Of a stretch of DNA of 64,000 nucleotides, positions 6,201 to 38,316 are shown in pieces. Each line of letters opens with the position of its first letter. Positions within the stretch are counted from its first letter, which is position 1. Origin of the DNA: Macrostomum lignano (taxonomy: Eukaryota); the NCBI GenBank assembly GCA_002269645.1, contig NIVC01000601.1, positions 1-64,000 of the forward strand. Reading direction: 5' to 3'. The translations under genes were made by a program, and so were the position numbers. The notes under the pieces were generated by a model. It was not told where the DNA came from, did not search any database, and saw only the letters and a program-made list of their open reading frames with translations.

Positions 6201-9200
6201 TACTGGAGGCCGAACCCTCGCTTTGCTTCATTGGCGTCGGTTCTCAGCACCACGGTGACGAATCCGCTCGCTCTCAGGGTCTTCCTCTCGCCAAGTAGGC
6301 CAGTCTGACTGAATATGGGAGACTCGCTGAGCCTGGGCTCAACTCCCGTGTACACACTGACTGTATCGCCATGCGGCTGGCCTCCCTCGGCATCAAAGAG
6401 CTGCAGCTCCACAGTCTGTTGAGGGCTCACAGCGATGGACCAGGCTCTCGCAGAACTCGGTCCGCAGCTGCTTCGACCATCAGGCATGAGGCAGCCCTGC
6501 AGTCCGTCCAAGTTTCGCAAAAGCGCAGTTGTCATCGATAAATCTGCAGGGAAGTTATTTAGAAAAGTCACTGTTCCTATCTAGAGATACAAATTGTGAA
6601 ATTGATTGTCGCTTTCAGATTGCCTCACTTTGTCGGTTGACACTGAACGTCGCCCCGAACGGCACTATCGTCGGCCTCATCCTTCGCGATTGAAGCCGAA
6701 CAACTGCTGGGCCTCTTAGTTTGAACTCGGTAGACATCAAATCGCTGAGCGGTGCATCAGTCAGGGAGAACACGCGACTCCTTGGAGTTGGGATCTTCGT
6801 CCTCTCGTGCAGCTCTAGCTTGTCGCAACCGCTTAGCAATTGAGCCTGCACGAATCGAATGCTGACCGCCGCTGTTGTGTCGACGACCCACCTTCGGTCA
6901 ATCTCCATGTCGTAGCCATCAGTATCGCAGACATCCAGCCCAATGGCATTCCTCAAGTTGCTTGACTGCACTCCAATTTCACCTTGAGTCTGTGTCAGAA
7001 CACTGGATATTACTAAAATATTATAGAAACCGTGCATTATTTCAGACAATAGAAAATACCAAAGACGCGTAAGATGGGATCAAAAACATCAAAGTGACAT
7101 CAGCATACCGAATTGGTCTCCTATTTCATAGGAAAAGTTTAGAGCTCTTTGCATTGGTCGACCAGCTGTAACTAACTTGATCATACCAGGTCCGATCAGT
7201 CTGTATGTAGATGAAGTAGCATTCCCCTTCGTCAGTGTAATGTTTGCAGCTGACGAGTCCTTTCTCCATAACTGGATTTTGTCGCAGCAGTCTGAGATTT
7301 CCACCCCACTGAATTTGACTGCCACAGCTGCCTTTCGGTCGATTTTCCAAATGTAGTTTACCTGGGCTTTGGTGAATGATGGCGGGTTCACCCACCGAAC
7401 TTCACCCGAGTCTCCTGACAGACCTGAAAGTTCGAATTCAACTTTTAACTTGTCTTATGAAGCAGCTTTCATAAATATAAATATAATGAACTACTGTTTG
7501 CTTGAATACATAAATTTTTTATTTTTGAAACGAGCCAGGTAAGAAAATGCAGAAATCTATCATGAACTCCTAAATTCTAATTAAAATCAAATTACGACGT
7601 ATAATCAAACTTTGATAAAAAAATACTATACTAATTATTTCTTACTTGAGGTTTCTTCTAGATAGTATGTCATGCGAAACCCGTCACGATTGCCACTGCC
7701 GTCAGTTTTGAACCTGATGAGCACTGGTCCCTTCAAGGTGTATGTTTCACCGTATCCGCTCCCTGTAAGCCTGTACTTTCGTTTATTTTCGTCAGGCTTC
7801 TCATGCACCGGTGAGTTTTCGTACAAGCCGATCCAATCATAATTACTCTCAGTATCATAGCGAATGAACGTAAGCACCACCGTTTTCTGCTCATAGATGC
7901 TCCACTCGTAGTCAACGTTGTTATCGTACTTAGAGTATCCATAGTTCTCCGGATATGAAAGGTTTCCACTGTCCACTGAAAGGATTTAAGGAAAATATAA
8001 TAACGAGTAAAAAGCGGTTGTTTAGTATGTGCAGACAAAATATTCCCAGAAAGACTGAAAGCTTTTAGGCAATTATGTGCTAACAAACTTCATGGAAACA
8101 TTGCGAATTGATGCTTACAGATTTTGCTGCCAGCCTGATAGTAGAGCTGGAAGCCGGGAGCAGTAACTTGAGAGTTCGTTCTGAACCGGATGAGCACTGG
8201 TCCGACCAGCGTAATATTCGACGCTTCTGCAGCCTCCTGAGTCACATTGAGCTTCCATCTCCGCCGATCTGGCTCTCCACTCTCATCGACCTTCTCATAG
8301 AACTCGATGGTGTCTTGAATGTCAATAAAGTCGAACCGAATGACAATGATGCTTTTTCGATTGATTGTCCATCGATAGTCCATGAACTTCTCATAGTTCA
8401 CCAGTGCGGTCTCGGGGCAGAAAATATTGCCGGAGTCATAATTTAATATTCGGTGTACTGCAAACGTTAATGAGAACATGTCTACACAGTAAGTTTTATT
8501 CGAGCTATAATCATCTCTCAGTTAGTAGCTTAAAGAGAATTCTATCTAAAGAACTGGAATTCTTGATATCCACTAGAATCCACTTGTTTACTACGAGCCA
8601 AAATTCCAGTTCACAACCATGCAACTGGCTGTGCACTGTTTATACTTTCTTCGAAAAAACATGCATGTGAAACCGTAAGTTTTATCTTCAAACAACATGG
8701 TCGCATTTCGATAGGATAAGAATCGGCAATTTGATAAGACCCTAAAGTCACAACTCAATGAAATGAACATACTGAGATAAGAATCGGCAATTCGATAAGA
8801 CCCTAAAGTCACAACTCAATGAAATGAACATACTGAGATAAGAATCGGCAATTCGATAAGACCCTAAAGTCACAACTCAATGAAATGAACATGCTGAGAT
8901 AAGAATCGACAATTCAATAAGACCCTAAAGTCACAACTCAATGAAATGAACATACTGAGATAAGAATCGGCAATTTGATGAGACCCTAAAGTCACAACTC
9001 AATGAAATGAACATACTGAGATAAGAATCGGCAATTCGATAAGACCCTAAAGTCACAACTCAATGAAATGAACATACTGAGATAAGAATCGGCAATTCGA
9101 TAAGACCCTAAAGTCACAACTCAATGAAATGAACATACTGAGATAAGAATCGGCAATTCGATAAGACCCTAAAGTCACAACTCAATGAAATGAACATGCT

Positions 9201-12200
9201 GAGATAAGAATCGACAATTCAATAAGACCCTAAAGTCACAACTCAATGAAATGAACATACTGAGATAAGAATCGGCAATTTGATGAGACCCTAAAGTCAC
9301 AACTCAATGAAATGAACATACTGAGATAAGAATCGGCAATTTGATGAGACCCTAAAGTCACAACTCAATGAAATGAACATGCTGAGATAAGAATCGGCAA
9401 TTTGATGAGACCCTAAAGTCACAACTCAATGAAATGAACATGCTGAGATAAGAATCGGCAATTTGATGAGACCCAAAAGATATAACTCAATGAATTGATA
9501 TTCTGACTTACAAGTCCGCTCTTTAGTAGTGTAGGACAGATTGAATCCCTGACCAACAAAATCTTTGCCCGGGACGAAACGGACCATGACTGGACCCGGA
9601 ATTCGGTAGGCCCCCCGTGCTGTAGCATTCGACTGAGTCAGAACGAACTTCAGCTTGGCCTGCTGTGGCTCGTCGGTCAAATAGGCTTCCTCGTACAGCT
9701 CGATGACGCCACTCCCAATGTCCACTGTTGAGACCTCGATAACAACTAAGTTAAGCCGGTTGATTGTCCATCTGTACTCCATTTCGCTCTCTAAGGTCTC
9801 ACCAGACACTTGAGGACAGCGAATTGAACCCGAGTCTTTTACGAGAGGCTCTTGAGCTGAAAAGAAGAAAGAAAAAATGCTCTTAGCTGCTTGCAAGTGA
9901 AATAAAATTTGACTAAAATCTGAAAGCGCTTTGAGTATTTTAATAAGCATCATAGCATTTTGCAATAAAATGACTACTCATAGAAGACAAAGACTGTATC
10001 ATTAGATAAAAATGCCAACATTCATTACCGTTCATTAACTGAAACTTGAACTCTCGCTGAGATCTAATGAAGCTCAAAGCCCGTGGTCGATAAACAACAG
10101 TGAGAGGACCGTTGTACCTGACGATGCTCGCATACGGGATCCGCTGGAGTGGCTCAGAATTCGACAAGCTGGTGACGGCTCCCTCATAGAGACTTATTGC
10201 GATTCCTGACTCCACTGGCAGCTCTGGCAGGTACAGCAGAACTGAGCGCCCGGGCTTGGCTGCAATGACCCATGCAGTAGGCGACCCGTTCTCGGGGATA
10301 AGAGCTCTCGAGCCTCGATAGCTGTCAATCAGCTCAACAGCCATGTCGGTATCTGCAGTGTCACACAAGCAGTCGCGTCAATCGCATATCTATGCTTGTC
10401 ACCTAAGAGATAACAATTCAATTTTTAGGAAATTATCACTCACTGCCCGACTGGTCAGCTGCATACGACAGTCGAAAGTCTCTCGACTGACCGTCTCCGC
10501 TGGCAACTAATCGAATCATGACGGGACCGGACAGACGGAACTCCGACTCTCTGGAGCTCGCATTGGTCACCAGGAATCTCAGAGCCGCTTCGTCCTCAGA
10601 CGTTGTGTTCTCGTAGATGTACAGCTTGCCATTGGGACGGAGGCTTATGGAGGCGAATCGGATGCTGAGTCTGATGTCTCTGCTAATGAACCAGCGGTAG
10701 TCAATGTCGCTGTTGAACTCCGCTGAGCCCTTCGGGAACCCGATCTGTCCACTCGGTTCCGCTTGAGGAGCTTAATGAAGGTGAGAAAATATTACCGATT
10801 TAGTTTTAGTTACCAACAGAGCTGCTGAAATTTGCGTAGTCAGTGCCTTGACTGTGTATATTCTGCTTCACTTTTACCTGACTCATGCATTTGGCTGTTA
10901 TGCCCTACATCACATTATATGCTAAGCTTTTCGTTGCACTTCGATTATCATAGTTCAAAACGATTCTTACTGCTGTATACAGTGTAGGAGAGACCGAGCC
11001 CACGTCGTGATCGTCTGGCTTCTGTCGTCAGCACCACAGTGACGAATCCGTTCGCTCTCACGGTCTTCCTCTCACCAAGTAGTCCAGTCTGACTGAATAT
11101 CGGGGACTCGCTCAGCACAGGACGAACCCCATTATATACGCCTATCGTATCCGTATGAAGCTGACTTCCCTCGGCATCAAATAGCTCGAGCTCAACGATT
11201 TGCTGGGGATTCACGGCGATAGACCATGCTCTTGTTGTGACATTGCTCACAGCGATGTCGGCACCTTTACTTTGGTAACAGATTCTCTCTCCTTTTTCAT
11301 TTTTGATTATTTCAGTAGGCATTTCCAGATCTGAAGCGACAATGGAATCATCATTGTAATAGTCTAAGAACGGAGTCACCCTAAACTTTAGTGATTCGTT
11401 TTAAGTCTAGAATTACCTCCGTCGCTGCTTCTGTAGGACAGCCTAAAAACTCGTCCCCTTGTCTGTGTCTTCTTAACCAGCACCAGCACCGGGCCGAACA
11501 GTCGGAAACGCGACGTCCCTTCTCTCTCTTTCGGTCCGTTGGTAAAGACGGGCTCCTTGTCGGGGGTTGTCGTCATCTGGTAGATCCGAGCGAGGTCAGA
11601 GAAGGACAGCTTGAGGTCGATTCTCCCGGGTCGGTCAATGAGCCATCTGTATTCAATGCTAACATTGCTGTCTCGATCCGAGACTTCCAGCTCTGAGCAG
11701 ATTGCGTCGTCGCTGGGCTCGGTGAAAGTTCTGAATCGAACTAAAATTGCGAAAATAGGGTAGTTTTTCAACTATCAGCTCATTGCTTTGATATTACTTA
11801 TACTATTTACCACTTATACTAATACGTATACTTATCCTACTTATCCAAGCTTTTTTTCAGTATAGGAAGCCTTCATTAAATACATGCAGACAGTAGCCAA
11901 CGTTAACAACGTTACTCACCCAAAGATTCCTCAAGCGTGTAGGTTAGGTTGAATCCCCTCTTTGCGACGCTACTATCTGTCTTAAATCGAATTAGCACAG
12001 GAGCAATGAGCACAAGCGCTTGGGATGTAGCGTTATTCGGATTGATTCGGAATTTCGGATTCCTGCGATACGATACTTCGAGGTCGTCCGTACCCTCGAA
12101 AATCTCCAAGCGGTCATATGGGGTCTCCAGTTCCGCAAAGTGGAATCGGATGGCTACAGCCTTCGGCCCGCGAATGGTCCAGTTGTAGACTTTTGAGTTC

Positions 12201-16787: not shown

Positions 16788-19700
16788 AATAACAACAAAA
16801 TACGCTGTCAGGTGGAAAAATGCAGCGTCACAGCGCCTTGGCGCGAACAAAGGCCGCACTGCCGGGGCGCCAGCGTCGGCCAGCAGGCAGTCGACGAAAC
16901 GCCGAGTTCGGGCCTGGCCGCACCGATAGGGTGCCTGCAGCGTTAGCAGCAGCACCTCCTGCACCGGCTGCGAGCAGTAGGACTCGGCGCGGATGATGTG
17001 GCCTGCCAGCTGGAGTCGCCGAAGTCGCAGCAGTTCACTTGGACGGGCCAGGCCGCCCGGCGGTAAAAATCACGTCGAAATGACGTCGAAAAGCGACGTC
17101 GAAATTTCATGTCGATTTGAACCCCGATTTCGACGTCGAATGTTTCGCCATCAGACGACGAGTATGCGACGTCGCGTTTTCCACTACTGATGGCGAAAAG
17201 TCGACGTCGTTTATATTCGTGATGACAGCAAGCTGATGGCGATTTTCGACAAATTTTCGATTTTTTATCTATATACTATAGTATCATTGTTAGTTAATAA
17301 TATGCTAGTTCATTGTTTCATACAATAGTCATAAGCTACATGTACTTATAACTGACGAAACATAATGTTAATTCATACACTAGCTATAATCTACCCTAAG
17401 AGGAACGAAATAAAGCATAAAAATGCCAATCAAGACTGCATGACGTTTCATTTGATATATATCCAAACCATGCATAGATGCAATTATTATCTCGCAACCA
17501 TGAAAAAAGTATACAGTGTATTCAATTCACTAGCAATTTGAAATATAATCATAGAAATAGCATCAAGCTATCAGGAACAGAAAGTAAACGATGGAAAATG
17601 AGGAACAACAATGGCAACAAATGCAACAAATTCAACAAATTGGAATCATAAATGGGAAACATTGAAAATCAATGGCGTCAGCGCGTTTACTCCTTGTGGA
17701 AAAGTCAGCTTTTCTGCACCCCTAAAAAGCGCAGTCTTCTGCCGTCGCATAGGACGTCCTTGGCCGCCAAGTTGAGAGGGGTATTTGCTGAAAATTTTTG
17801 GTAGAGTAGGAGGTGGCTTTACTAAACAAGTAAAATACTTGAAATAAAATAAATTTCTGAAAAAAATTACAATATATATACAATATTGAAATACAATACA
17901 ATATGTTCTAAATATAATCCCAGACCTCATAGAGCATTTACAATAGAGTTTTTAACTTTTTATAGCATAGCTACATATTATAGTATCTCCTGTTTTCCCT
18001 ACATAGAAAAAGTTAAGATAATTATGGTATAAGTAGTAATTCATGCAGCTATGGGTGGGCTATGCTTTTTGTCTTTGAATGTAACAAACATTCCTTAGAA
18101 TGCATATATAAATGAATTTTAAGTTAAAATTATATTTTAATACATTTCTCAAAAATTTGTTTCAAAACAAATATATACTTTACATAGTTGTGCCCTTTTA
18201 ACATTTACGAGTATGAGGATTGAATCCATCACTGTTCATTGTTACACTATTAATATTTCCAATAGGCTGCACTAAAAAGTAAAAGTTTCTAGTTTATGGC
18301 TACTTTGATATTAATTCATTTGTCCTGTATAAAATCCTACATGTATATAGTAGTCAGCGGCAGTATTATAAAACATCAAACTAAACACAAAATTTTTAAC
18401 GCACAATAATAGCAACAAAAATAATGCAACACAAATTACATAATGAAAGGAATGAATTGCCAAGTGTAATACAGAAAATATATACGTATATGAAATACAC
18501 TAAAATTAATTTATAAGTCTACAATATGACAAATAATCGAGATGCGATCGATAATCGACATCGCATGGCGATATTTTTAAAAAAAAGTGTATCTTATGCG
18601 TTGTAAACAAAAATTATCGTGTCTGTTTTACACTGAATTAATTTGTCCTTTAAGTTAACTTAAAGCAACGTTGGAAAAATATTTTTAAATACTTATTACT
18701 GATCAATTCTGCAAATTGAGGGATAAAAAAATTAATATCGAAATTTCGACGTCGAATGAAGGTTCAAACGACAACTCATTAGTCGCTAGTTTTTGAAAGT
18801 CGAATATCGACGTCATTTCGACGTGATTTTTACCGCCGGGCGGTGCAGCAGTGCCGCGTTAGTGATCTGCTCGTCGTTGATCTTAAAGGCGGCGCGCAGC
18901 AGGCCAGCGTGCGCCGCGTTGACTTGCTGTTCGAGCGAATCCGTCAGCGTCCAGGTCTCGGCGTTATACAACAGGACGGTCTTGACCACCGCCTGGAACA
19001 GGGCCGCCCTCTGGCGGTCAGGTAGGGCCTCGGACTGCAGGACCGCCCTCACAGAGCGAAAGGCAGCCCAAGCGAGCCCGCGGCGACGCCGCAGATCTTC
19101 GCGGACGTCAGGTACCAGACCGCCGAGGTATACGAACTGCTGACAGCGCGGAAGCTCCGTTACCTGCCCGTCAGCGCCTCGGCAGAAATTGCGGCCTCGA
19201 TGTCGCCCGGCCCACAGAGCACAACGGTCTTCTTCGTGTTGACCACCAGGCCGACGCTCGCTGCAGCGCTAACCAGCTTGTCCAGCTGGCGCTGGGCGCC
19301 CTCTACGGTGGAGAACGGCAGGGCGAGGTCATCGGCGTAGCCAAGCATGCTGAGCCGTTTCTCCAGTTGACGTTGACCCACGCGTCGCCGCAATAGGAAG
19401 CCGTCTTCGTCGGTAGGAAGAGCAGTCCGCAGCGCCCAGTCAAGCACCAGGACGAACAGGAACGGCGCTAGTGTGTCCCCTGGAGCACCCCGGAGGATGT
19501 CTCGAAGGAGTCCGACAAGCCGTCCGACGTCATCACAGCTGCTCTCGTAGCACAGTACAATGCCATTATGGCGGAGATCAGGTGTTTTGGCACATGGTAC
19601 GCGCGGAGCACATGTGGGAGCGCAGCCCTTGCAACCGAGTCGAATGCCTTCATGAAGTCAATGAAGACAACAATCAGGTCCAACTGGCGCGAGCGCGCCT

Positions 19701-21335
19701 CCTCGATGATTCGGCGAAGAGCTAGGATCTGCGTCACTGTGCCACGGTGGGGCCGAAACCCGTTCTGCTCAGGTCGCAGGTAAGGATCCAGCACGGGTTG
19801 CAACCGCGATAGCAGCATCCGGTTGAACAACTTCGCAGCACAGGATTGCAGGCAGATGCCTCGGTGCTCGTCTAGTCGTATAGTGCCCGGCTTCTTTGGA
19901 ATGGCGATGATGTGCGCCATGATCCACTCGGTGGGTGCCACCTCACCGGAGAGCACGCGGTTCATCACACGGGCGACCTCACTGGCCACACAGTAGATGC
20001 GCAGCGCCTCGATGGGCACCTCGTCCGGACCCAGCGCCTTGCGGCCCGGCGTCTTCTGGGCGAGCGTTACGACTTCAGCCATGGTGACTGGTGCAACGTT
20101 AAAACTGTCATCTGACGGCAACGGAGTCTCTGGTGGCAGCGTCAGGATGTTGGGCAGTGGGGGTGGCGGTGCGTTGACTATGGCGGCGAAGAACTCGCGC
20201 AGCTCGTTCCTGCGCTCATCCGCAGTGTCGCCTGCCAGATTCAGTTGGATGCACCGCTTCCGCCGTCAGAGCGTTAATGGCGGACCAGGCCACGCGCCCT
20301 CTGGCGTCGGGCCCAGCGGCAGAGACGGCCTGGACAACTTCATCAACTGCGGCCTGCTGCCACTGCAGATAGACAGTCGCCAGAGCCTCCTCCGCCTCGC
20401 GAGTAGGTCGCCTGCTCAGACGGAGCTTCTCCAGATCTTCCCTCGCTTGCTGAATCACAGGGTCGTCCTGCCAGACCGGCTGCCCACGTTGGGCCGGTCG
20501 CATCAACGGGACCGCTTGTTCCGCGGCGCTCACATCCGCGTACTCGGCATCCCCACGCTTGCTGCCGAGCGCAGTGATGAAGTTGCTAGCAAAGTGGCAG
20601 TGCGTTCCGGCGTCTTTGAGAGCGCGGTAGTAGCGCCGCGGTGGCCGCTTTGGCGGACGGTAAAGCGGATTGCGTAGCTCGAGGTCGCACATGAGAAACC
20701 GATGATCAGACCGCAGAGCCAGCGGCGTGATGGTGCGGCAGTTGACAGCGCGGCGGCGCTCAGGGATCGCAGAAGCACGTGGTCGATCTGTGCTAGCCTC
20801 CATGTAGCAAACCGGCCGCGCGCGTTCTGCCACCTCCGTTTGCAGCCCACGAAAGTCGCGAGCCTGCTGGGTGGCTTGCGGAAGCGGGTGTTGGCCGACA
20901 CCATATCCTGCCTCTCCAGGAAGTCCTCCAGCGCCTGGTTGTTGCCGTTCTCGCGGGGCGTCACAAACAGCGACCGCTCGGACCTACGCGGAACTGCGTT
21001 TAGGTCTCCGAGTACGACCACCGTGTCGCGCTGCGCAGTCTCCTCCACGCGCGCAGAGAGCTGCTCGAAGAAGTCCTGAGCCTCATCTGGGCGGGTGGCA
21101 GGTGGCGCGTACACGCAGAACAGGCAAGCGTTCCGGCCGCGAAGCCGGACGTCTACCCGAAGCATCCGGGGGACAAGAAAGAGCAGCGATAGCTCTGCTG
21201 CAGTCTCGGGCCGATCAGTGCTCCAACTCCTCCACGGCCTCGTTGATCCGCTGAGGTGTACCAGAGTGTCCAAACAGAGCTCAGGTCCTCACAGTGAAGT
21301 CCAGGCTCGGCTCTGATAGACACTTCCTGAAGTTC
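16788..21335 (-). mobile_element. Decayed RTE-clade non-LTR retrotransposon (APE endonuclease plus RT), 5'-truncated and split by a nested DNA transposon
   Basis: APE motifs LQEV, CVYAP, VLGDLNA and AQIDHVL (20770-21335). RT motifs PKKPG...RGICL, EQNGFR, FIDFMKAFDSV, GVLQG and YADD (19328-19339). C-terminal RLRRLQLAGHIIRAE lies at 16985-17030, with the stop at 16828-16830. Several frameshifts. Confidence 0.92.
17061..18835. mobile_element. Non-autonomous TIR DNA transposon inserted in the RTE ORF (possibly CACTA/EnSpm-like)
   Basis: Perfect 29-bp TIRs CGGTAAAAATCACGTCGAAATGACGTCGA (17061-17089 and 18807-18835). CCGG occurs on both flanks (17057-17060 and 18836-18839). Clusters of subterminal (C)GACGTCG motifs; AT-rich interior without a credible ORF. 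Excision restores the RTE reading frame. Confidence 0.88.
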
Positions 21336-22099: not shown

Positions 22100-25000
22100 A
22101 TGTCGAATCTAGAAAAACTGGAGGAGCTAGAATGTCACTTTACCTGGCTCCCAGAGGATGGCAGCACGAACACAAGCATCGATGAAGTTATCAAAAAGAC
22201 TGAAAGAAAGATTGACCGCCAGCCTCACAAGAAGTCGGCTCATTTAACGACTCTGGCTTACCTATATACTCGCAAAAGGGGTAAGAACTTCGGTTTGGCT
22301 CACAAATGCCTCGAGGAAGCTCTGGCGATCGATGAGCAAATCCGGCGCGATAAGCAGGAAGATGTGCAAGTATCTAGCGAGTTTGTCATCAGGGCCAACA
22401 TGCTGCACCTCGAGCAGCTGAGAAAAGGACAAAATAGAACTCTGAAGCCTGCAGAAATCGAACCGAAAATGCAGAGACTTAACAGCCTGTGGAGCGACTC
22501 AAACAGCCAGGCCCGGGTGTACGGAGTGAAAGGTGTCACATTCGACTGCTTCGGTCCCATGAAGTATCCGGTTGGAGTCGTTGCCTTCGCGGAGGCGTCA
22601 AGGCTTCAGGCGAATAATTTCAACTGGTTGTACGGCGAGGCGTTCCTGAGAGCTCGATGCGACAGACAGGTTGTGAAGAAGCACGCCGATAAAGCTCAGC
22701 TTCAGCTGTGGAGCAGGGCACGAGAAATTGGCGAGCGAACCGGACAAACAACTAACAATGCTACCTTCTACTCCAATTATGCTGAGGCAATTCTTTACAA
22801 CAGAAGATTGACTGAGCTATGCTGCGAACTTACGGATAGAGCAGTCGATATTCTTCGGAGAATGTCCGAGGAAGAGAAGGAGAACTCGCACGTGGACATG
22901 AAGATCTGCTTGAAGACCTATAGGCACATTAAGAAAATTTCGAATCTGGACTGTGAAAGCCGTCGAAAAACATTACTTGAGGAAGCAGGAAAAGTAGCAA
23001 TGATGCTCAAAGATCCAGACTTCTTTTTAACCATAGCCAATGAGGCTGAAGAAGCAGGAGACCGAGATAAAGCGATTGAACTGCTTGAAAGAGGCAAGCA
23101 ATTAGCAGGTGAGCCGGGTCACATATGGCTGAATCTTCGCCTTTTGGAGCTACAAATGCAAACCTTGAACAAGCAGCAAGTTATCGATGAGTTTGTCTCC
23201 ATGAGAGAGAGCTTCGGAGTTTATTTGAAGAACGTTTCAGCTATCGAGTTTCACAAGGCGCTATACTTGATAAAACAGGGCGATACAAAGGAGGCCTTAG
23301 AGTCATGCGTTGCTGCTTTAGAGGCCGATCCAAAAGTGGACCAGGTCTGGTTTAGCAAGAAGAAGGAGTTTTTTCTATGCCTAACCCAAAAGACTGCCGG
23401 CTTCGAGGAATATGTAGCCTGGTTTGCTGCCAACGTCGGCGACTTCAAAGAGCCGGTAAACATCGAGCCTCTCTTTCTACAGGCGCTTAATAAAGATGCC
23501 AGCAACGAGTTCGCGCTTGAGCATCTGGGTCGTTTTTATATAAAAAAGGGCCGATTAGACAATGCCTCTGGCTGCTTCAGGAAGCTGCCAGACCACATTG
23601 AGTGCAAGTACAAGCTACTCGCTCAGTCGCTGCTGGAGGACCCGAATGCAAGCTTTCAGAAGCTGCAGGAGTGTCTACAGTGCGGTTGCAGAGATGCTGT
23701 GCCGAAGCTTCTAGAATTTCTTGAGCAACGAAAGGCGAGCCAAAACACTGCCGAGATTGTCATTAACGATGTCGTGAGTCGGAGTGCCCGGGACTCTCTG
23801 TTCTTCAGCACTCAGCTGTATGAGCTGTGCGCTGAAATGGAGGCCACACTACAGGATCCGAACAGGTTTTGGCTTCGCGAAGATAACACGGAATCGACTA
23901 ATGATCCTGTAGAGCTAGCGAAACGGAGAATCGCAAAGTTTTTAGAGCTGGACCAGCTCATGAGCACAGTGGCATCGAGTCGATCCTGCGATGGCTCAGG
24001 CGACCGGGGAAACTTGATGAGGTCCAGCAGACTACGTTTAACGAAGCAGCGTCTTGAGAGAGGAGGCAAAACTCAGCAACAAACGCAGGAGCTCAACAAC
24101 CTCATCGTTTCAGTGGTGAAGGAGTCGAAGGAGGTTCTGGACCGCTCTCTAGTTGTCTTACTTTCTCGTTGCAAAAAAGAAGCGAAAGATGCGAAAAAAT
24201 TGGCACTATCTCGTAAGGAGAAAGAAAAGCGAAGCATAAATATCGACCACTATTATCCTCACGCGTTCAACAAAATCAAGAAGCAGCTTGGAAGTGACTT
24301 CCAAGAAAAGCTCAACAAGCTGGCTTTAGATGGCAAAGACACAAAAGCATTTGAGCGAGAATCACTGATAACCTATCTGAAAGAAGGAAAAAAAATTCAA
24401 ACCCAACCAGGCGCCACAGCGACGACAAATAATTCGGTATCGCCTGAGAACGTCCGAAAATGTCTTTCAGAGGCAGTCGCCGAAATTGACCCGAACTTCC
24501 ATCAGCAGAAGAGCACGAAAGATATGTTCGAATTCATGGCCCGTCGTGAGCACAGGATTCTGTCACAGGAGGACTGCTGGATTGTCCACTGGATCTACCT
24601 GGTGAACAGTGAGAAGCACTCAGCCGAGATTCTCGTGGCTGAGCTAAATGAACAGCTGCGTTCTGATTGGTCGGGAGGCGGCGAGTGCAATAGAACGGCG
24701 TATGATGTGGCGCACCTGGCAGCGGAGTTCGCTGAAGAGACCTGGGCCGTCTTCTCGTGTGAGAGCAGATCTGTTGTACCCACTGGCGCACATTCAACAC
24801 AGGTAGTTGCTTGTGTCGGAGATTCTAAAAATGCCGAAGACGTAGCATCTAATGTCACGGTTACCGGAGGAAATGTTACTGGTGCTGGAGATGCAACTGG
24901 TCTCGAAGATGTCACTTGTGCTGGAGTAGCGGCAAGCAGCGTTGATCATGTTTCATTATACACTAGTGCTTCCAACAATCCCGACGAAAGGGACAATTCG

Positions 25001-25558
25001 CGCAGCTACTTTGGCCGAGGCGGCATAGCGAGAGGCGGCAGTGAGCACTTCCGAGGCCGAGGCGGCAGTGAGCACTTCCGAGGCCGAGGCGGCAGTGAGC
25101 ACTTCCGAGGCCGAGGCGGCAGTGAGCACTTCCGAGGCCGAGGCGGCAGTGAGCACTTCCGAGGCCGAGGCGGCAGTGAGCACTTCCGAGGCCGAGGCGG
25201 CAGTGAGCACTTCCGAGGCCGAGGCGGCAGTGAGCACTTCCGAGGCCGAGGCGGCAGTGAGCACTTCCGAGGCCGAGGAGGCAGTGAGCACTTCCGAGGC
25301 CGAGGCGGCAGTGAGCACTTCCGAGGCCGAGGCGGCAGTGAGCACTTCCGAGGCCGAGGCGGCAGTGAGCACTTCCGAGGCCGAGGCGGCAGTGAGCACT
25401 TCCGAGGCCTAGGCGGCAGTGAGCACTTCCGAGGCCGAGGCAGCAGTGAGAGAGGCGGTAAATATGAGCACTCCCGTAGCGATAGGACAAGTTCCGAAGC
25501 TACTGAAACCGGTGCCAAGGTAAGAGGCGAAGGAAGGTTCGCAAATCGAGAAGACTAA
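22100..25558 (+). CDS. Intronless 1152-aa protein: IFIT-like TPR region, putative HEPN RNase domain and RGG-repeat tail
   Basis: Uninterrupted ORF (first ATG at 22100, TAA at 25556-25558). The N-terminus LEELECHFTW...TLAYL...KCLEEA...RANM...KGVTFDCFGPMKY...AFAEA...NWLYGEA follows the IFIT1/IFIT5 pattern. Further TPR-like helices run to about 23760. A helical domain at about 24000-24750 carries KESKEVLDRSL, HYYPH and WIVHWIYLVNSEKH. The C-terminus is (GGSEHFRGR)x15. Confidence 0.9.
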   Translation: MSNLEKLEELECHFTWLPEDGSTNTSIDEVIKKTERKIDRQPHKKSAHLTTLAYLYTRKRGKNFGLAHKCLEEALAIDEQIRRDKQEDVQVSSEFVIRANMLHLEQLRKGQNRTLKPAEIEPKMQRLNSLWSDSNSQARVYGVKGVTFDCFGPMKYPVGVVAFAEASRLQANNFNWLYGEAFLRARCDRQVVKKHADKAQLQLWSRAREIGERTGQTTNNATFYSNYAEAILYNRRLTELCCELTDRAVDILRRMSEEEKENSHVDMKICLKTYRHIKKISNLDCESRRKTLLEEAGKVAMMLKDPDFFLTIANEAEEAGDRDKAIELLERGKQLAGEPGHIWLNLRLLELQMQTLNKQQVIDEFVSMRESFGVYLKNVSAIEFHKALYLIKQGDTKEALESCVAALEADPKVDQVWFSKKKEFFLCLTQKTAGFEEYVAWFAANVGDFKEPVNIEPLFLQALNKDASNEFALEHLGRFYIKKGRLDNASGCFRKLPDHIECKYKLLAQSLLEDPNASFQKLQECLQCGCRDAVPKLLEFLEQRKASQNTAEIVINDVVSRSARDSLFFSTQLYELCAEMEATLQDPNRFWLREDNTESTNDPVELAKRRIAKFLELDQLMSTVASSRSCDGSGDRGNLMRSSRLRLTKQRLERGGKTQQQTQELNNLIVSVVKESKEVLDRSLVVLLSRCKKEAKDAKKLALSRKEKEKRSINIDHYYPHAFNKIKKQLGSDFQEKLNKLALDGKDTKAFERESLITYLKEGKKIQTQPGATATTNNSVSPENVRKCLSEAVAEIDPNFHQQKSTKDMFEFMARREHRILSQEDCWIVHWIYLVNSEKHSAEILVAELNEQLRSDWSGGGECNRTAYDVAHLAAEFAEETWAVFSCESRSVVPTGAHSTQVVACVGDSKNAEDVASNVTVTGGNVTGAGDATGLEDVTCAGVAASSVDHVSLYTSASNNPDERDNSRSYFGRGGIARGGSEHFRGRGGSEHFRGRGGSEHFRGRGGSEHFRGRGGSEHFRGRGGSEHFRGRGGSEHFRGRGGSEHFRGRGGSEHFRGRGGSEHFRGRGGSEHFRGRGGSEHFRGRGGSEHFRGRGGSEHFRGLGGSEHFRGRGSSERGGKYEHSRSDRTSSEATETGAKVRGEGRFANRED
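25030..25440 (+). repeat. Coding VNTR, 27-bp unit x15, encoding GGSEHFRGR
   Basis: Unit GGCGGCAGTGAGCACTTCCGAGGCCGA; near-identical copies with degenerate flanking copies; in frame within the 22100-25558 ORF. Confidence 0.97.
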
Positions 25559-27276: not shown

Positions 27277-27310
27277 CTAAGAGAAGCTAAGAGTATCTAA
27301 GAGTATCCAA

Positions 27311-28590
27311 CCCTTCTGTAGCTGGCGCTCCACCACTGTGTAGCTGGCGCTCCACCACTGTGTAGCTGGCGCCCCACCCCTCTGTAGCTGGCGCCCAACC
27401 TCTATGTAGCTGGCGCCCAACCTCTATGTAGCTGGCGCCCAACCTCTATGTAGCTGGCGCCCCACCCCTCTGTAGCTGGCGCCCAACCTCTATGTAGCTG
27501 GCGCCCAACCTCTATGTAGCTGGCGCCCCACCCCTCTGTGGCTGGTGCCCCACCTCTATGTAGCTGGCGCCCAACCTCTATGTAGCTGGCGCCCAACCTC
27601 TATGTAGCTGGCGCCCCACCCCTCTGTGGCTGGTGCCCAACCCCTCTGTAGCTGACGCCCAACCCCTCTGTAGCTGGGGCCCAACCCCTCTGTAGCTGGC
27701 GCCCAGCCCCTCTGTAGCTGGGGCCCAACCCCTCTGTAGCTGACGCCCAGCCCCTCTGTAGCTGGGGCCCAACCCCTCTGTAGCTGACGCCCAACCCCTC
27801 TGTAGCTGGGGCCCAACCCCTCTGTAGCTGACGCCCAACCCCTCTGTAGCTGGGGCCCAACCCCTCTGTAGCTGGCGCCCAGCCCTCTGTAGCTGGGGCC
27901 CAACCCCTCTGTAGCTGGGCCCAACCCCTCTGTAGCTGACGCCCAACCCCTCTGTAGCTGGGGCCCAACCCCTCTGTAGCTGGCGCCCAACTCTCTGTAG
28001 CTGGGCCCAACCCCTCTGTAGCTGGGGCCCAACCCCTCTGTAGCTGGGGCCCAACCCCTCTGTAGCTGGGGCCCAACCCCTCTGTAGCTGACGCCCAACC
28101 CCTCTGTAGCTGGGGCCCAACCCCTCTGTAGCTGGCGCCCAACCCCTCTGTAGCTGGGGCCCAACCCCTCTGTAGCTGGGGCCCAACCCCTCTGTAGCTG
28201 GGCCCAACCCCTCTGTAGCTGACGCCCAACCCCTCTGTAGCTGGGGCCCAACCCCTCTGTAGCTGGCGCCCAACCCCTCTGTAGCTGGGGCCCAACCCCT
28301 CTGTAGCTGGGGCCCAACCCCTCTGTAGCTGGGGCCCAACCCCTCTGTAGCTGACGCCCAACCCCTCTGTAGCTGGGGCCCAACCCCTCTGTAGCTGGCG
28401 CCCAACCCCTCTGTAGCTGGGGCCCAACCCCTCTGTAGCTGACGCCCAACCCCTCTGTAGCTGGGGCCCAACCCCTCTGTAGCTGACGCCCAACCCCTCT
28501 GTAGCTGGGGCCCAACCCCTCTGTAGCTGGCGCCCAACCCCTCTGTAGCTGGGGCCCAACCCCTCTGTAGCTGGGGCCCAACTCTCTGTA
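27311..28590. repeat. Minisatellite, 20-22-bp unit
   Basis: Variants of CTGTAGCTGGGGCCCAACCCCT in tandem. Confidence 0.95.
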
Positions 28591-28830
28591 GATTTTATTT
28601 CCAGGCTTGAAAAAGCATTTCCAAGAATTGGATTTGGTGCACAAGTCAAAGATTAGTTGGATCTTAAGTCCTCATTTATTAGTAAAAATCGCGTACATTT
28701 TTCATGTACTTATCGTGAGAAAGTCAACAATGTACACGTGGAAATAACGGTTTTTAAGGAAAACTCCTTAAAGTACATTGCCACCATTAGTTGCATTGAC
28801 AACTCGAAGAAAATGTGAGAATATTTCGGT

Positions 28831-35849: not shown

Positions 35850-38316
35850 TTAGAATGGATTGCTAATCTAGCCAACATCACGGATGAAGGGATAGAATGG
35901 ATTGCTAATCTAGCCAACACATCACAGATGAAGGAATAGAATGGATTGCTAATCTAGCCAACACATCACAGATGAAGGAATAGAATGGATTGCTAATCTA
36001 GCCAACATCACAGATGAAGGGATAGAATGGATTGCTAATCTAGCCAACACATCACAGATGAAGGAATAGAATGGATTGCTAATCTAGCCAACATCACAGA
36101 TGAAGGGATAGAATGGATTGCTAATCTAGCCAACACATCACAGATGAAGGAATAGAATGGATTGCTAATCTAGCCAACATCACGGATGAAGGAATAGAAT
36201 GGATTGCTAATCTAGCCAACATCACGGATGAAGGGATAGAATGGATTGCTAATCTAGCCAACACATCACAGATGAAGGAATAGAATGGATTGCTAATCTA
36301 GCCAACACATCACACATGAAGGAATAGAATGGATTGCTAATCTAGCCAACATCACACATGAAGGAATAGAATGGATTGCTAATCTAGCCAACACATCACA
36401 GATGAAGGAATAGAATGGATTGCTAATCTAGCCAACATCACACATGAAGGAATAGAATGGATTGCTAATCTAGCCAACACATCACACATGAAGGAATAGA
36501 ATGGATTGCTAATCTAGCCAACACATCACAGATGAAGGAATAGAATGGATTGCTAATCTAGCCAACATCACACATGAAGGAATAGAATGGATTGCTAATC
36601 TAGCCAACACATCACAGATGAAGGAATAGAATGGATTGCTAATCTAGCCAACACATCACAGACGAAGGAATAGAATGGATTGCTAATCTAGCCAACGCAT
36701 CACAGATGAAGGAATAGAATGGATCGCTAATCTAGCCAACATCACAGATGAAGGAATAGAATGGATCGCTAATCTAGCCAACATCACAGATGAAGGAATA
36801 GAATGGATCACTAATCTAGCCAACATCACAGATGAAGGAATAGAATGGATCGCTAATCTAGCCAACATCACAGATGAAGGAATAGAATGGATCGCTAATC
36901 TAGCCAACATCACAGATGAAGGGATAGAATGGATCGCTAATCTAGCCAACATCACAGATGAAGGAATAGAATGGATCGCTAATCTAGCCAACACATCACA
37001 GATGAAGGAATAGAATGGATGGCTAATCTAGCCAACACATCACAGATGAAGGAATAGAATGGATTGCTAATCTAGCCAACATCACAGATGAAGGGAAAGA
37101 ATGGATTGCTAATCTAGACAACACATCACAGATGAAGGAATAGAATGGATCGCTAATCTAGCCAACACATCACAGATGAAGGGATAGAATGGATTGCTAA
37201 TCTAGCCAACATCACGGATGAAGGAATAGAATGGATTGCTAATCTAGCCAACATCACGGATGAAGGGATAGAATGGATTGCTAATCTAGCCAACACATCA
37301 CAGATGAAGGAATAGAATGGATTGCTAATCTAGCCAACACATCACAGATGAAGGAATAGAATGGATCGCTAATCTAGCCAACATCACAGATGAAGGGATA
37401 GAATGGATCGCTAATCTAGCCAACATCACAGATGAAGGAATAGAATGGATCACTAATCTAGCCAACATCACAGATAAAGGAATAGAATGGATCGCTAATC
37501 TAGCCAACATCACAGATGAAGGAATAGAATGGATCGCTAATCTAGCCAACATCACAGATGAAGGAATAGAATGGATCGCTAATCTAGCCAACATCACAGA
37601 TGAAGGAATAGCATGGATTGCTAATCTAGCCAACACATCACAGATGAAGGAATAGAATGGATGGCTAATCTAGCCAACACATCACAGATGAAGGAATAGA
37701 ATGGATTGCTAATCTAGCCAACACATCACACATGAAGGAATAGAATGGATTGCTAATCTAGCCAACATCACAGATGAAGGAATAGAATGGATTGCTAATC
37801 TAGCCAACATCACAGATGAAGGAATAGAATGGATTGCTAATCTAGCCAACATCACAGATGAAGGAATAGAATGGATCGCTAATCTAGCCAACATCACAGA
37901 TGAAGGAATAGAATGGATTGCTAATCTAGCCAACATCACAGATGAAGGAATAGAATGGATCGCTAATCTAGCCAACATCACAGATGAAGGAATAGAATGG
38001 ATCGCTAATCTAGCCAACATCACAGATGAAGGAATAGAATGGATCGCTAATCTAGCCAACATCACAGATGAAGGAATAGAATGGATCGCTAATCTAGCCA
38101 ACATCACAGATGAAGGAATAGAATGGATTGCTAATCTAGCCAACACATCACAGATGAAGGAATAGAATGGATTGCTAATCTAGCCAACACATCACAGATG
38201 AAGGAATAGAATGGATCTGAATCTGAATTTGAATCTGAATCTGAATCTGAATCTGAGTCTGAATCTGAATCTGAATCTGAATCTGAATCTGAATCTGAAT
38301 CTGAATCTGAATCTGA
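35850..38316. repeat. Minisatellite with 42/44-bp units, followed by (GAATCT)n
   Basis: ATAGAATGGATTGCTAATCTAGCCAACATCACAGATGAAGGA, with or without an extra AC; hexamer run at about 38213-38316. Confidence 0.96.

What the first reader, a model, noticed from the sequence alone, without database searches (positions are those of the whole stretch)
22100..23760. IFIT-family signature in an invertebrate genome
The N-terminus reproduces IFIT hallmarks in order and spacing: LEELECHFTW (22118-22147, compare IFIT1 LEQLRCHFTW); TLAYL...KCLEEA (compare NLLAYV...SLKEA); RANM (compare WGNF); and KGVTFDCFGPMKY...AFAEA...N..WLYGEAFLRAR (compare EGWALLKCGGKNY...CFEK...PE...GYAI..YRLD). The CHFTW motif is quite specific to IFITs. 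IFITs are best known as interferon-induced genes of jawed vertebrates, so a homolog here would bear on the pre-interferon origin of this sensor family.
Basis: partly seen in the sequence, partly recalled or inferred. Interest (0 to 1): 0.72.

Follow-up and report, generated by a model that had tools for sequence, protein, structure and literature searches.

The report
Flatworm relative of antiviral IFIT proteins
A flatworm (Macrostomum lignano) gene encodes a 1152-residue protein whose first ~500 residues are a true but distant relative of the vertebrate antiviral RNA sensors called IFITs, which matters because IFITs were thought to have arisen together with interferon in jawed vertebrates.

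Summary
The flagged span is the N-terminal half of one intronless ORF (22100..25558, +, 1152 aa) of Macrostomum lignano (hypothetical protein BOX15_Mlig030191g2). It starts with LEELECHFTW, the invariant IFIT N-terminal motif at the same spacing; about 6e-5 such motifs are expected by chance in the window.

Evidence for homology:
- An exhaustive HMMER search found a family of about 55 invertebrate proteins, plus a stingray IFIT5-like protein at E=1.6e-8.
- A profile built only from invertebrate members hits human IFIT5 (6.7e-19), IFIT1 (7.6e-13) and IFIT2 (1.1e-9) as long colinear matches. The next natural protein scores 2e-4.
- hhalign gives 99.1% probability over window residues 5-496 against IFIT5 residues 11-461.
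- An AlphaFold model (pLDDT 89.9) has IFIT5 as its five best PDB matches (TM 0.58-0.59).

It is not a canonical IFIT. Only 3 of 9 invariant RNA-pocket residues are kept and K150 is Cys. The protein also carries an uncharacterised ~330-aa C-terminal module and a GRGGSEHFR repeat tail.

RNA binding is inferred, not shown. The searchable literature restricts IFITs to jawed vertebrates.

The parts
22100..25558 (+). Complete intronless coding sequence, 1152 aa plus stop (TAA at 25556-25558). Equals M. lignano hypothetical protein BOX15_Mlig030191g2, except for the number of C-terminal repeats.
   Evidence: tblastn finds a single copy in the window
22118..22147 (+). LEELECHFTW (residues 7-16): the IFIT N-terminal hallmark LxxLxCHFTW, with the same spacing as IFIT5 L13..L16.C18HFTW22.
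   Evidence: PMC11462223 describes CHFTW as invariant among IFITs, in loop L1 between alpha1 and alpha2; chance expectation
22112..23587 (+). IFIT-homologous helical (TPR-derived) region, residues 5-496, colinear with IFIT5 residues 11-461.
   Evidence: hhalign probability 99.1%, E=1.4e-18; PDB profile searches; AlphaFold model pLDDT 89.9 and Foldseek top hits IFIT5/IFIT1
23021..23137 (+). Pfam-detectable TPR (TPR_14/TPR_19), residues 308-346.
23249..23335 (+). Consensus-like TPR (TPR_2/TPR_8/TPR_1), residues 384-412. This repeat draws in the designed consensus-TPR hits.
23513..23584 (+). TPR (TPR_7), residues 472-495 (FALEHLGRFYIKKGRLDNASGCF).
23780..24760 (+). Family-specific C-terminal module, residues 561-887, with no counterpart in IFITs. 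Its conserved core is about residues 806-886 (nt 24515-24757), with invariant E817, I820, W827, W831, N836, K839, H840, E876 and E879 (RREHxI..AW..W....N..KH ... AYDVAHxAAEFAE).
   Evidence: alignments; no match in Pfam, PDB, PADLOC or NCBIfam; recurs in 25 or more hits of the exhaustive search
24761..25031 (+). Low-complexity Gly/Ala/Val/Thr/Ser-rich linker, residues 888-977, not conserved in the paralog.
25032..25450 (+). 27-bp tandem repeat x15.5 encoding GRGGSEHFR (13 exact copies; 17 RGG tripeptides in the protein). This is an RGG/RG-type tail. The NCBI copy of the protein has only 5 repeats.

Best explanation
The ORF 22100-25558 is a functional Macrostomum lignano gene. Its N-terminal ~500 residues are a divergent homolog of the vertebrate IFIT proteins: the same N-terminal LxxLxCHFTW motif, the same order of helices, and the same clamp-like arrangement of TPR-derived subdomains.

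It belongs to a previously undescribed invertebrate family. The family has several M. lignano paralogs, short IFIT-sized proteins such as UniProt T1JLK3, and many genes on unnamed animal contigs from environmental assemblies. The short invertebrate members link the flatworm proteins to vertebrate IFITs.

Shown here: the homology, the predicted fold and the family. Inferred: the clamp binds single-stranded RNA in the channel between its subdomains, as IFIT1 and IFIT5 do, using the retained Y156, R186 and R275 (IFIT5 R260) together with basic residues K33, K37 and K268. It probably does not use the canonical 5'-triphosphate or cap pocket, because K150, Y250, Y254, H287 and Q288 are replaced. The RGG repeat tail would add non-specific RNA affinity, and the conserved C-terminal module would provide an unknown partner or effector function. 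The most likely biological role is RNA surveillance or regulation (antiviral, or directed at other non-self or aberrant RNA) that does not depend on interferon.
For: Gene and family:
- An intact 1152-codon ORF, identical over 950 aa to an annotated M. lignano protein on an 883-kb contig.
- A paralog at about 50% identity keeps the motif and the long conserved blocks.
- The exhaustive HMMER search gives 59 hits at E<=1e-3, many beginning L..LECHF[TNK]W.

Link to IFIT:
- A stingray IFIT5-like protein appears at E=1.6e-8.
- Invertebrate-only profiles hit IFIT5/1/2/3 at 1e-15/2e-10/7e-10/9e-6 (N-domain) and IFIT5/1/2 at 6.7e-19/7.6e-13/1.1e-9 (full region), as single colinear stretches starting at the N-terminus. 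The next natural proteins score about 1e-4.
- hhalign probability is 99.1%, E=1.4e-18, over 426 columns.
- Single sequences P0160 and P0161 reach IFIT5 at 4.7e-7 and 3.5e-5.

Fold: the AlphaFold model, built with no vertebrate IFIT in its alignment, has pLDDT 89.9 and pTM 0.80. Foldseek ranks 1-5 are IFIT5 (TM 0.54-0.59 normalised to IFIT5, rmsd about 7 A), followed by IFIT1.

RNA inference:
- Y156, R186 and R260 are conserved, and R253 becomes K (the residue list is Table 5 of PMC9677429).
- M. lignano proteins with the same N-domain carry RRM_1 domains (P0136, P0146).
- Proteins with the same C-terminal module are named C3H1-type zinc-finger proteins by UniProt (P0173, P0192).
- RGG repeats occur in the window protein and in P0157.
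Against: - Identity to IFITs is only 16-18%, and a single-sequence phmmer search of the window protein finds no IFIT in PDB. The link needs profiles or intermediates.
- TPR proteins give inflated profile-profile scores in general. Generic bacterial TPR proteins score higher in total against the IFIT HMM than the window protein does, so the argument rests on colinearity, the N-terminal motif, ranking and TM-score rather than raw score.
- The strongest triphosphate contact of IFIT5, K150, is Cys here. Y250, Y254, H287, Q288 and F337 are also replaced.
- No RNA-binding data exist, no expression or inducibility data were available, and pocket electrostatics could not be computed.
- AlphaFold was trained on PDB entries that include IFIT5.
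- No ISRE-like element lies near the gene.
- More than half of the protein (residues 497-1152) has no IFIT counterpart.
Confidence: 0.6

Rival explanations
1. The protein has an IFIT-derived fold but is not an RNA clamp. The TPR region would be a protein-protein scaffold, as IFIT3 largely is, and any RNA contact would come only from the RGG tail or from partner proteins.
For: Five of nine invariant pocket residues are replaced, including K150. TPR arrays are classic protein-binding modules (Pfam TPR hits). The large conserved C-terminal module suggests additional partners. The paralog P0002 lacks the RGG tail.
Against: R186, Y156 and R275 are strongly conserved across the family: R in 18 of 22 sequences, Y in 14, and R or K in 11. 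Extra basic residues sit at the positions of T37 and Q41. Fusion partners within the family are RNA-binding modules.
Confidence: 0.25
2. It belongs to a separate, older TPR family that merely shares a common ancestor with IFITs. This could be a sister family that includes proteins such as TTC22, so calling it 'IFIT family' would overstate the relationship.
For: Identity is only 16-18%. The architecture differs (1152 aa with a C-terminal module). The TTC22 comparison could not be run. The long flatworm type scores lower against the IFIT HMM (10-24 bits) than the short invertebrate type (30-46 bits).
Against: CHFTW is described as an IFIT-specific invariant (PMC11462223) and is present here. Among solved structures only IFITs match from the N-terminus. 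The only named vertebrate protein among the exhaustive hits that I looked up is an IFIT5-like protein.
Confidence: 0.3
3. It is a generic TPR protein, and the CHFTW motif and IFIT resemblance are chance or convergence.
For: Single-sequence searches give only generic TPR hits. A truncated two-sequence profile lost IFIT5.
Against: Motif expectation is 6e-5. Colinear similarity beyond the motif exceeds all or 99% of shuffles. There is a gap of about 15 orders of magnitude between IFITs and other natural TPR proteins. The global structural match is best to IFIT5. The motif is conserved at the N-terminus of about 20 family members.
Confidence: 0.03
4. It is not a functional flatworm gene: either a contaminant, a recent horizontal acquisition, or a decaying pseudogene.
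For: It is intronless. It lies next to a retrotransposon fragment and a large block of satellites. No expression data were found.
Against: The ORF runs 3.4 kb uninterrupted. The same protein is on an 883-kb M. lignano contig. Several diverged paralogs exist in the same species. The conservation pattern between paralogs is block-wise, as expected under selection. Relatives in other animals are also intronless and lie in tandem. At 16-18% identity to vertebrate IFITs, recent transfer from a vertebrate is excluded.
Confidence: 0.03

Closest known systems
Human IFIT5 (PDB 4HOR, 4HOQ, 3ZGQ), a 5'-triphosphate ssRNA-binding TPR clamp
   Same: N-terminal LxxLxCHFTW motif at the same spacing. Colinear profile match over IFIT5 residues 11-461. 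Best sequence-profile hit in PDB (6.7e-19). Best structural hit (TM 0.58-0.59). Y156, R186 and R260 conserved.
   Different: 16-18% identity. K150 becomes C, Y250 becomes V, Y254 becomes I, H287 becomes L, Q288 becomes T, F337 becomes H. The window protein has a further ~650 residues (C-terminal module plus RGG repeats). There is no interferon system in flatworms and no ISRE near the gene.
Human IFIT1 (PDB 5W5H, 5UDI, 6C6K), a cap0/PPP-RNA binder
   Same: Colinear match of profile positions 6-425 to IFIT1 residues 12-426, E=7.6e-13. TM 0.53-0.58.
   Different: The same pocket differences apply. The cap-binding residues of IFIT1 were not examined individually.
Short invertebrate IFIT-like proteins found here: UniProt T1JLK3 (P0161, 441 aa), P0160 (405 aa), P0155 (426 aa), P0151 (472 aa)
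   Same: The same N-domain with L..L[EQ]CHF[TKR]W. They hit the window family profile at 1e-10 to 1e-14. They are IFIT-sized TPR proteins.
   Different: They lack the C-terminal module and the RGG tail. They are closer to vertebrate IFITs (30-46 bits against the IFIT HMM, versus 23 for the window protein) and reach IFIT5 by pairwise search.
M. lignano paralogs: P0002 (Mlig031348g1), P0136 and P0146 (RRM-fused), P0144 (Mlig010163), P0152 (Mlig011244), P0157 (Mlig019237), P0169, P0173 and P0192 (C3H1 zinc finger)
   Same: They share the N-domain, the C-terminal module, or both.
   Different: They carry different accessory modules: an RRM at the N-terminus, CCCH fingers after the C-module, and different low-complexity tails.
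RGG/RG-motif RNA-binding proteins (FUS, hnRNP, nucleolin type tails)
   Same: 17 RGG tripeptides in a 27-bp tandem array.
   Different: The repeat unit GRGGSEHFR is idiosyncratic, variable in copy number, and absent from the closest paralog.

Membership tests
[quoted passage not shown] | Invariant N-terminal pentapeptide CHFTW, preceded by LxxLx, in the loop between helices alpha1 and alpha2 | tested here: met
   LEELECHFTW at residues 7-16, matching IFIT5 L13, L16 and C18-W22. Also kept in paralog P0002 and in about 20 family members. The motif is defined in PMC11462223.
[quoted passage not shown] | Significant, colinear sequence similarity to IFITs over most of their length, with IFITs as the best match among characterised proteins | tested here: met
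   hhalign 99.1%, E=1.4e-18, window residues 5-496 against IFIT5 residues 11-461. In PDB, IFIT5 scores 6.7e-19, IFIT1 7.6e-13 and IFIT2 1.1e-9, against 2.3e-4 for the next natural protein. This needs profiles; the single sequence alone fails.
[quoted passage not shown] | All-helical clamp of three TPR-derived subdomains plus a pivot, rather than a regular TPR superhelix | tested here: met
   Prediction only. Model pLDDT 89.9. The five best Foldseek hits are IFIT5 (TM 0.54-0.59 normalised to the target, rmsd about 7 A over about 545 columns), then IFIT1. Regular TPR solenoids give TM 0.11-0.52 with rmsd 14-28 A.
[quoted passage not shown] | Conserved 5'-end RNA pocket residues (IFIT5 K150, Y156, R186, Y250, R253, Y254, R260, H287, Q288) | tested here: not met
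   Three of nine are identical (Y156, R186, R260 as R275) and one is conservative (R253 to K268). K150 becomes C150, Y250 becomes V265, Y254 becomes I269, H287 becomes L310 and Q288 becomes T311. The residue list comes from PMC9677429 Table 5.
[quoted passage not shown] | Binding of 5'-ppp or cap0 single-stranded RNA | not testable with these tools
   This needs recombinant protein and binding assays. Surface electrostatics could not be computed either, because model coordinates are not exposed.
[quoted passage not shown] | Induction by interferon or virus through ISRE elements | tested here: not met
   GAAANNGAAA occurs twice in the window, at 588 and 2043, about 20 kb from the gene and below chance expectation. 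Flatworms have no known interferon (general knowledge). Inducibility by infection was not testable.
[quoted passage not shown] | Size of about 400-500 aa consisting only of the TPR clamp | tested here: not met
   The protein is 1152 aa, and residues 497-1152 have no IFIT counterpart. Short family members (405-472 aa) do meet this feature.
[quoted passage not shown] | Closer to IFITs than to other vertebrate TPR families such as TTC22 | not tested
The literature search links TTC22 and IFIT only in gene lists.
Tetratricopeptide repeat (TPR) superfamily | At least one Pfam TPR repeat above the gathering score | tested here: met
   TPR_2 at 38 bits (cut-off 27), TPR_14 at 31.5 (23.5), TPR_8 at 31 (25.7) and TPR_19 at 30.2 (25), at residues 308-346, 384-412 and 472-495.
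RGG/RG-motif proteins | Clustered RGG tripeptides in a disordered tail | tested here: met
   17 RGG tripeptides, with 13 exact GRGGSEHFR units encoded by a 27-bp tandem repeat. RNA binding by the tail is not testable here.

The most novel reading that the evidence does not exclude
IFITs are not a jawed-vertebrate invention that arose with interferon. They would be the vertebrate branch of an old, animal-wide family of CHFTW-clamp proteins. In flatworms this clamp is fused to a conserved, so far unknown C-terminal module (invariant E, W, W, N, K-H, E..E) that acts as an effector. The protein would then be a self-contained, interferon-independent RNA sensor-effector, with RRM-, CCCH- and RGG-bearing paralogs forming a lineage-specific RNA-surveillance toolkit.
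Probability: 0.2. Interest if true: 0.85.

Novelty: new variant of a known kind. Interest (0 to 1): 0.68.

Why it matters
The published view is that IFIT genes exist only in jawed vertebrates and arose together with the interferon genes (Liu et al. 2013, PMC3688568; restated in PMC11462223). I found no report of an invertebrate IFIT homolog in the searchable literature.

A family of invertebrate proteins with the IFIT hallmark motif and an IFIT-like predicted fold moves the origin of this sensor scaffold to before interferon. It also supplies intermediates (short, IFIT-sized invertebrate proteins) for reconstructing how the 5'-end RNA pocket evolved.

The question becomes experimentally testable in Macrostomum lignano, a laboratory flatworm in which RNAi and transgenesis are available (general knowledge). 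The work also exposes an uncharacterised conserved domain that travels with RNA-binding modules.

Tried and rejected
- Single-sequence phmmer of the full protein and of residues 1-600 against PDB gave only designed consensus TPRs, via one repeat at residues 391-424, and no IFIT.
- A two-sequence profile of residues 1-356 lost the IFIT5 hit seen with residues 1-600, because it fell below HMMER's filters.
- The first hhalign run was spoiled by a tandem-duplicated IFIT1B in the IFIT alignment and by the shallow query.
- The first AlphaFold run, with a two-sequence alignment, gave pLDDT below 50 for residues 1-240 and was not used.
- The third word-indexed homolog search, with the N-domain profile, returned only one protein because the candidate list was swamped.
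- A loosely specified literature search returned irrelevant papers.
- Net charge and pI of the regions do not discriminate.
- PADLOC, NCBIfam, Pfam and a PDB profile search of the C-terminal module all found nothing.
- By eye, P0173 has CCCH-like fingers. Pfam did not confirm this, but UniProt names the protein as C3H1-type.
- The taxon of the ENA and Logan contigs could not be determined. P0161 (T1JLK3) has no contig on record. Its assignment to the centipede Strigamia maritima is from my memory of the accession series and is unverified.
- The TTC22 comparison could not be run.
- The HEPN-like Rx4-6H motif was considered for the C-terminal module and rejected, because the Arg is not conserved.
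Full report
**What is there.** The flagged span 22100-23760 is the first half of a single uninterrupted ORF on the + strand, from ATG 22100 to TAA 25556-25558, 1152 aa. Over the 950 residues searched it is 100% identical to 'hypothetical protein BOX15_Mlig030191g2' of the free-living flatworm Macrostomum lignano, which lies on an 883-kb contig. A paralog (Mlig031348g1, P0002, 921 aa) is about 50% identical. The window holds only this one copy.

**Checking the observation.** LEELECHFTW is encoded at 22118-22147, as stated. In an alignment of vertebrate IFITs, L13, L16 and C18-H19-F20-T21-W22 (IFIT5 numbering) are invariant. The flatworm protein has L7, L10 and C12-W16, and the paralog has LDQLECHFTW. 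A published description calls CHFTW invariant among IFITs and places it in loop L1 between helices alpha1 and alpha2, where it contacts alpha7 (PMC11462223). By chance, 0.005 CHFTW and 6e-5 LxxLxCHFTW are expected in the six-frame translation of the window; one of each is seen.

IFIT positions 12-197 align to residues 5-196 of the window protein (15.6 bits), and positions 12-198 to residues 3-198 of the paralog (22.3 bits). In the first 215 IFIT positions, 71 columns are at least 90% conserved, 65 of them within the aligned range; the window protein matches human IFIT5 at 28 of them. Shuffle controls show the signal is not just the pentapeptide:
- With the motif kept and the rest of residues 1-240 shuffled, scores average about 10 bits (maxima 20.0 and 22.4 in 1000 shuffles) against 21.0 and 27.3 for the real sequences.
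- With the motif deleted, the remainder still aligns in register (IFIT 56-190 to residues 50-188) at 4.8 and 8.1 bits, against a 99th percentile of 3.6.

**Is it related to IFITs or just another TPR protein?** Pfam sees only generic TPRs, at residues 308-346, 384-412 and 472-495. Single-sequence searches of PDB find only designed consensus TPRs. A two-paralog profile of residues 1-600 brought up IFIT5 at E=1.2e-5, but a shorter profile lost it.

The decisive step was an exhaustive HMMER search of 1.84 billion representative proteins with the two-paralog profile. It gave 59 hits at E<=1e-3. About 20 of them begin with L..LECHF[TNK]W or close variants. [quoted passage not shown] The other named hits are M. 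lignano paralogs and UniProt T1JLK3. The rest come from unnamed animal contigs in ENA and Logan assemblies.

Short, IFIT-sized members score 30-46 bits against the vertebrate IFIT HMM over IFIT positions ~11-296 (P0161 at 441 aa, P0160 at 405 aa, P0155 at 426 aa). P0160 and P0161 reach IFIT5 directly by pairwise phmmer, at 4.7e-7 and 3.5e-5, as long colinear stretches. They therefore bridge the flatworm proteins and vertebrate IFITs.

Profiles built only from invertebrate sequences then gave the results below.

| Test | IFIT5 | IFIT1 | IFIT2 | IFIT3 | Next natural protein |
|---|---|---|---|---|---|
| N-domain profile vs PDB (A6, 25 sequences) | 1e-15 (profile 8-209 to residues 13-213) | 2e-10 | 7e-10 | 9e-6 | about 1e-4, a single TPR |
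| Whole TPR-region profile vs PDB (A7, 26 sequences) | 6.7e-19 (9-367 to 13-348) | 7.6e-13 (6-425 to 12-426) | 1.1e-9 | not listed | 2.3e-4 |

A profile-profile comparison of A7 with 16 IFITs gave probability 99.1%, E=1.4e-18, over 426 columns, aligning window residues 5-496 to IFIT5 residues 11-461. One caveat: total HMM scores are not discriminating for TPR proteins, since long bacterial TPR proteins out-score the window protein against the IFIT HMM. The case therefore rests on colinearity from the very N-terminus, the motif, the ranking and the structure.

**Structure.** With the 26-sequence alignment (no vertebrate IFIT, no templates), AlphaFold2 gave a confident all-helical model of residues 1-600 (mean pLDDT 89.9, pTM 0.80). 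The earlier two-sequence run had been poor. In Foldseek against PDB:
- Ranks 1-5 are all human IFIT5 (E from 2.8e-8 to 7.9e-7; TM 0.54-0.59 normalised to IFIT5 and 0.45-0.50 normalised to the 600-residue query; rmsd about 7 A over about 545 columns).
- IFIT1 entries follow (TM 0.53-0.58).
- Ctr9, OGT, SPINDLY, Ski3 and BBS4 have similar E-values, but TM of 0.11-0.52 and rmsd of 14-28 A.

The predicted global arrangement is therefore that of the IFIT clamp, not a regular TPR solenoid.

**The RNA pocket.** I took the mutationally tested IFIT5 residues from Table 5 of PMC9677429 and mapped them through the profile-profile alignment.

| IFIT5 residue | Window residue | Note |
|---|---|---|
| Y156 | Y156 | kept |
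| R186 | R186 | kept (R in 18 of 22 family sequences) |
| R260 | R275 | kept |
| R253 | K268 | conservative |
| T37 | K33 | becomes basic |
| Q41 | K37 | becomes basic |
| K150 | C150 | lost; the strongest triphosphate contact (a few family members have R) |
| Y250 | V265 | lost |
| Y254 | I269 | lost |
| H287 | L310 | lost |
| Q288 | T311 | lost |
| F337 | H341 | lost |

So 3 of the 9 IFIT-invariant pocket residues are identical and one is conservative. The canonical 5'-ppp/cap pocket is not preserved, although a basic lining remains plausible. Bulk charge is uninformative.

**What IFITs do not have.** Residues 561-887 form a module conserved across the family. Its core is RREHxI..AW..W....N..KH...AYDVAHxAAEFAE, with invariant E817, I820, W827, W831, N836, K839, H840, E876 and E879. 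It has no match in Pfam, PDB, PADLOC or NCBIfam.

The protein ends in a low-complexity linker and a 27-bp tandem repeat x15.5 (25032-25450). The repeat encodes 13 exact GRGGSEHFR units, and the protein has 17 RGG tripeptides in all. The NCBI copy has 5 units, which accounts for its 1062 aa.

Within M. lignano:
- Proteins with the same N-domain carry RRM_1 domains upstream (P0136 at 5.5e-9, P0146 at 1e-6).
- Proteins with the same C-module are named C3H1-type zinc-finger proteins by UniProt (P0173, P0192), although Pfam did not confirm a finger.
- P0157 combines the C-module with RGG-rich repeats.

These partners are all RNA-binding modules. That is the main indirect argument for an RNA-related function.

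**Context.** A broken non-LTR retrotransposon (RVT_1 and endonuclease, minus strand, 19468-21273) ends about 830 bp upstream of the gene. From 27.3 kb to the end, the window is a patchwork of more than 20 unrelated satellite arrays, and these account for all the other long 'ORFs'. No ISRE-like element lies near the gene. In one environmental animal contig, two family genes sit in tandem, both intronless, reminiscent of the clustered, nearly single-exon IFIT genes of vertebrates.

**Comparison with what is known, and novelty.** Liu et al. 2013 searched invertebrate genomes and concluded that IFITs exist only in jawed vertebrates and arose together with interferon. Their invertebrate and lamprey candidates grouped with FKBP4, not with IFITs (PMC3688568). 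Later papers repeat this. Searches for invertebrate IFITs in the held literature returned only IFITM mentions or citations, and the gene itself is not mentioned anywhere. Automated database classifications that I could not consult may already group some of these proteins with IFITs.

I file the protein as a new variant of a known kind. It is an IFIT-superfamily member by motif, sequence profile and predicted fold. It fails the membership features of pocket conservation, size and architecture, and interferon-type regulation. Its RNA binding is untested.

**Verdict.** The mechanism (an ssRNA-binding clamp with a non-canonical pocket, assisted by an RGG tail and coupled to an unknown C-terminal module, working in interferon-independent RNA surveillance) is inference (about 0.4-0.5). 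Interest is 0.68.

Noticed in passing
window 25032-25450: A 27-bp tandem repeat x15.5 (98% matches) lies inside the CDS and encodes GRGGSEHFR. The window copy has 13 exact units, but the NCBI protein for the same gene has 5 (1152 vs 1062 aa). This suggests copy-number polymorphism or collapse in one assembly.
   Followed up: partly
window 23780-24760 (core 24515-24757): A conserved C-terminal module (RREHxI..AW..W....N..KH...AYDVAHxAAEFAE) with nine invariant residues matches nothing in Pfam, PDB, PADLOC or NCBIfam. It also occurs without the IFIT-like part, joined to C3H1-type zinc-finger proteins and RGG repeats in other M. lignano proteins. Its function is unknown.
   Followed up: partly
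window 19468-21273, minus strand: A fragmented non-LTR retrotransposon (RVT_1 at E=4e-16; Exo_endo_phos at E=2e-7), split over several overlapping ORFs, ends about 830 bp upstream of the gene's start codon.
   Followed up: partly
window 27307-63771: More than 20 different satellite or minisatellite arrays lie back to back, for example a 22-mer x59 at 27307-28591, a 42-mer x55 at 35851-38216, a 57-mer x19 at 39127-40229, a 35-mer x64 at 56180-58361 and a 21-mer x88 at 59363-61280. All the multi-frame ORFs of 200 aa or more in this stretch are artefacts of these repeats.
   Followed up: partly
window 8715-9498: A 61-bp tandem repeat x12.9 (96% matches) lies upstream of the gene region. It was not examined further.
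   Followed up: no
L004 10001-12610 and 16666-18762: On an unnamed environmental animal contig (ENA ERZ25074608, 491 kb), two members of the family (869 and 698 aa) lie in tandem on the same strand about 4 kb apart. Both are intronless, which resembles the clustered arrangement of vertebrate IFIT genes.
   Followed up: partly
proteins P0136 and P0146 (M. lignano; not in the window): Two paralogs have an RRM_1 domain fused upstream of a degenerate version of the IFIT-like N-domain, in which the motif reads AESPFKW or AENPFKW instead of ECHFTW.
   Followed up: partly
window 3342-4253, minus strand: A 303-aa ORF with no Pfam match. It was not examined further.
   Followed up: no
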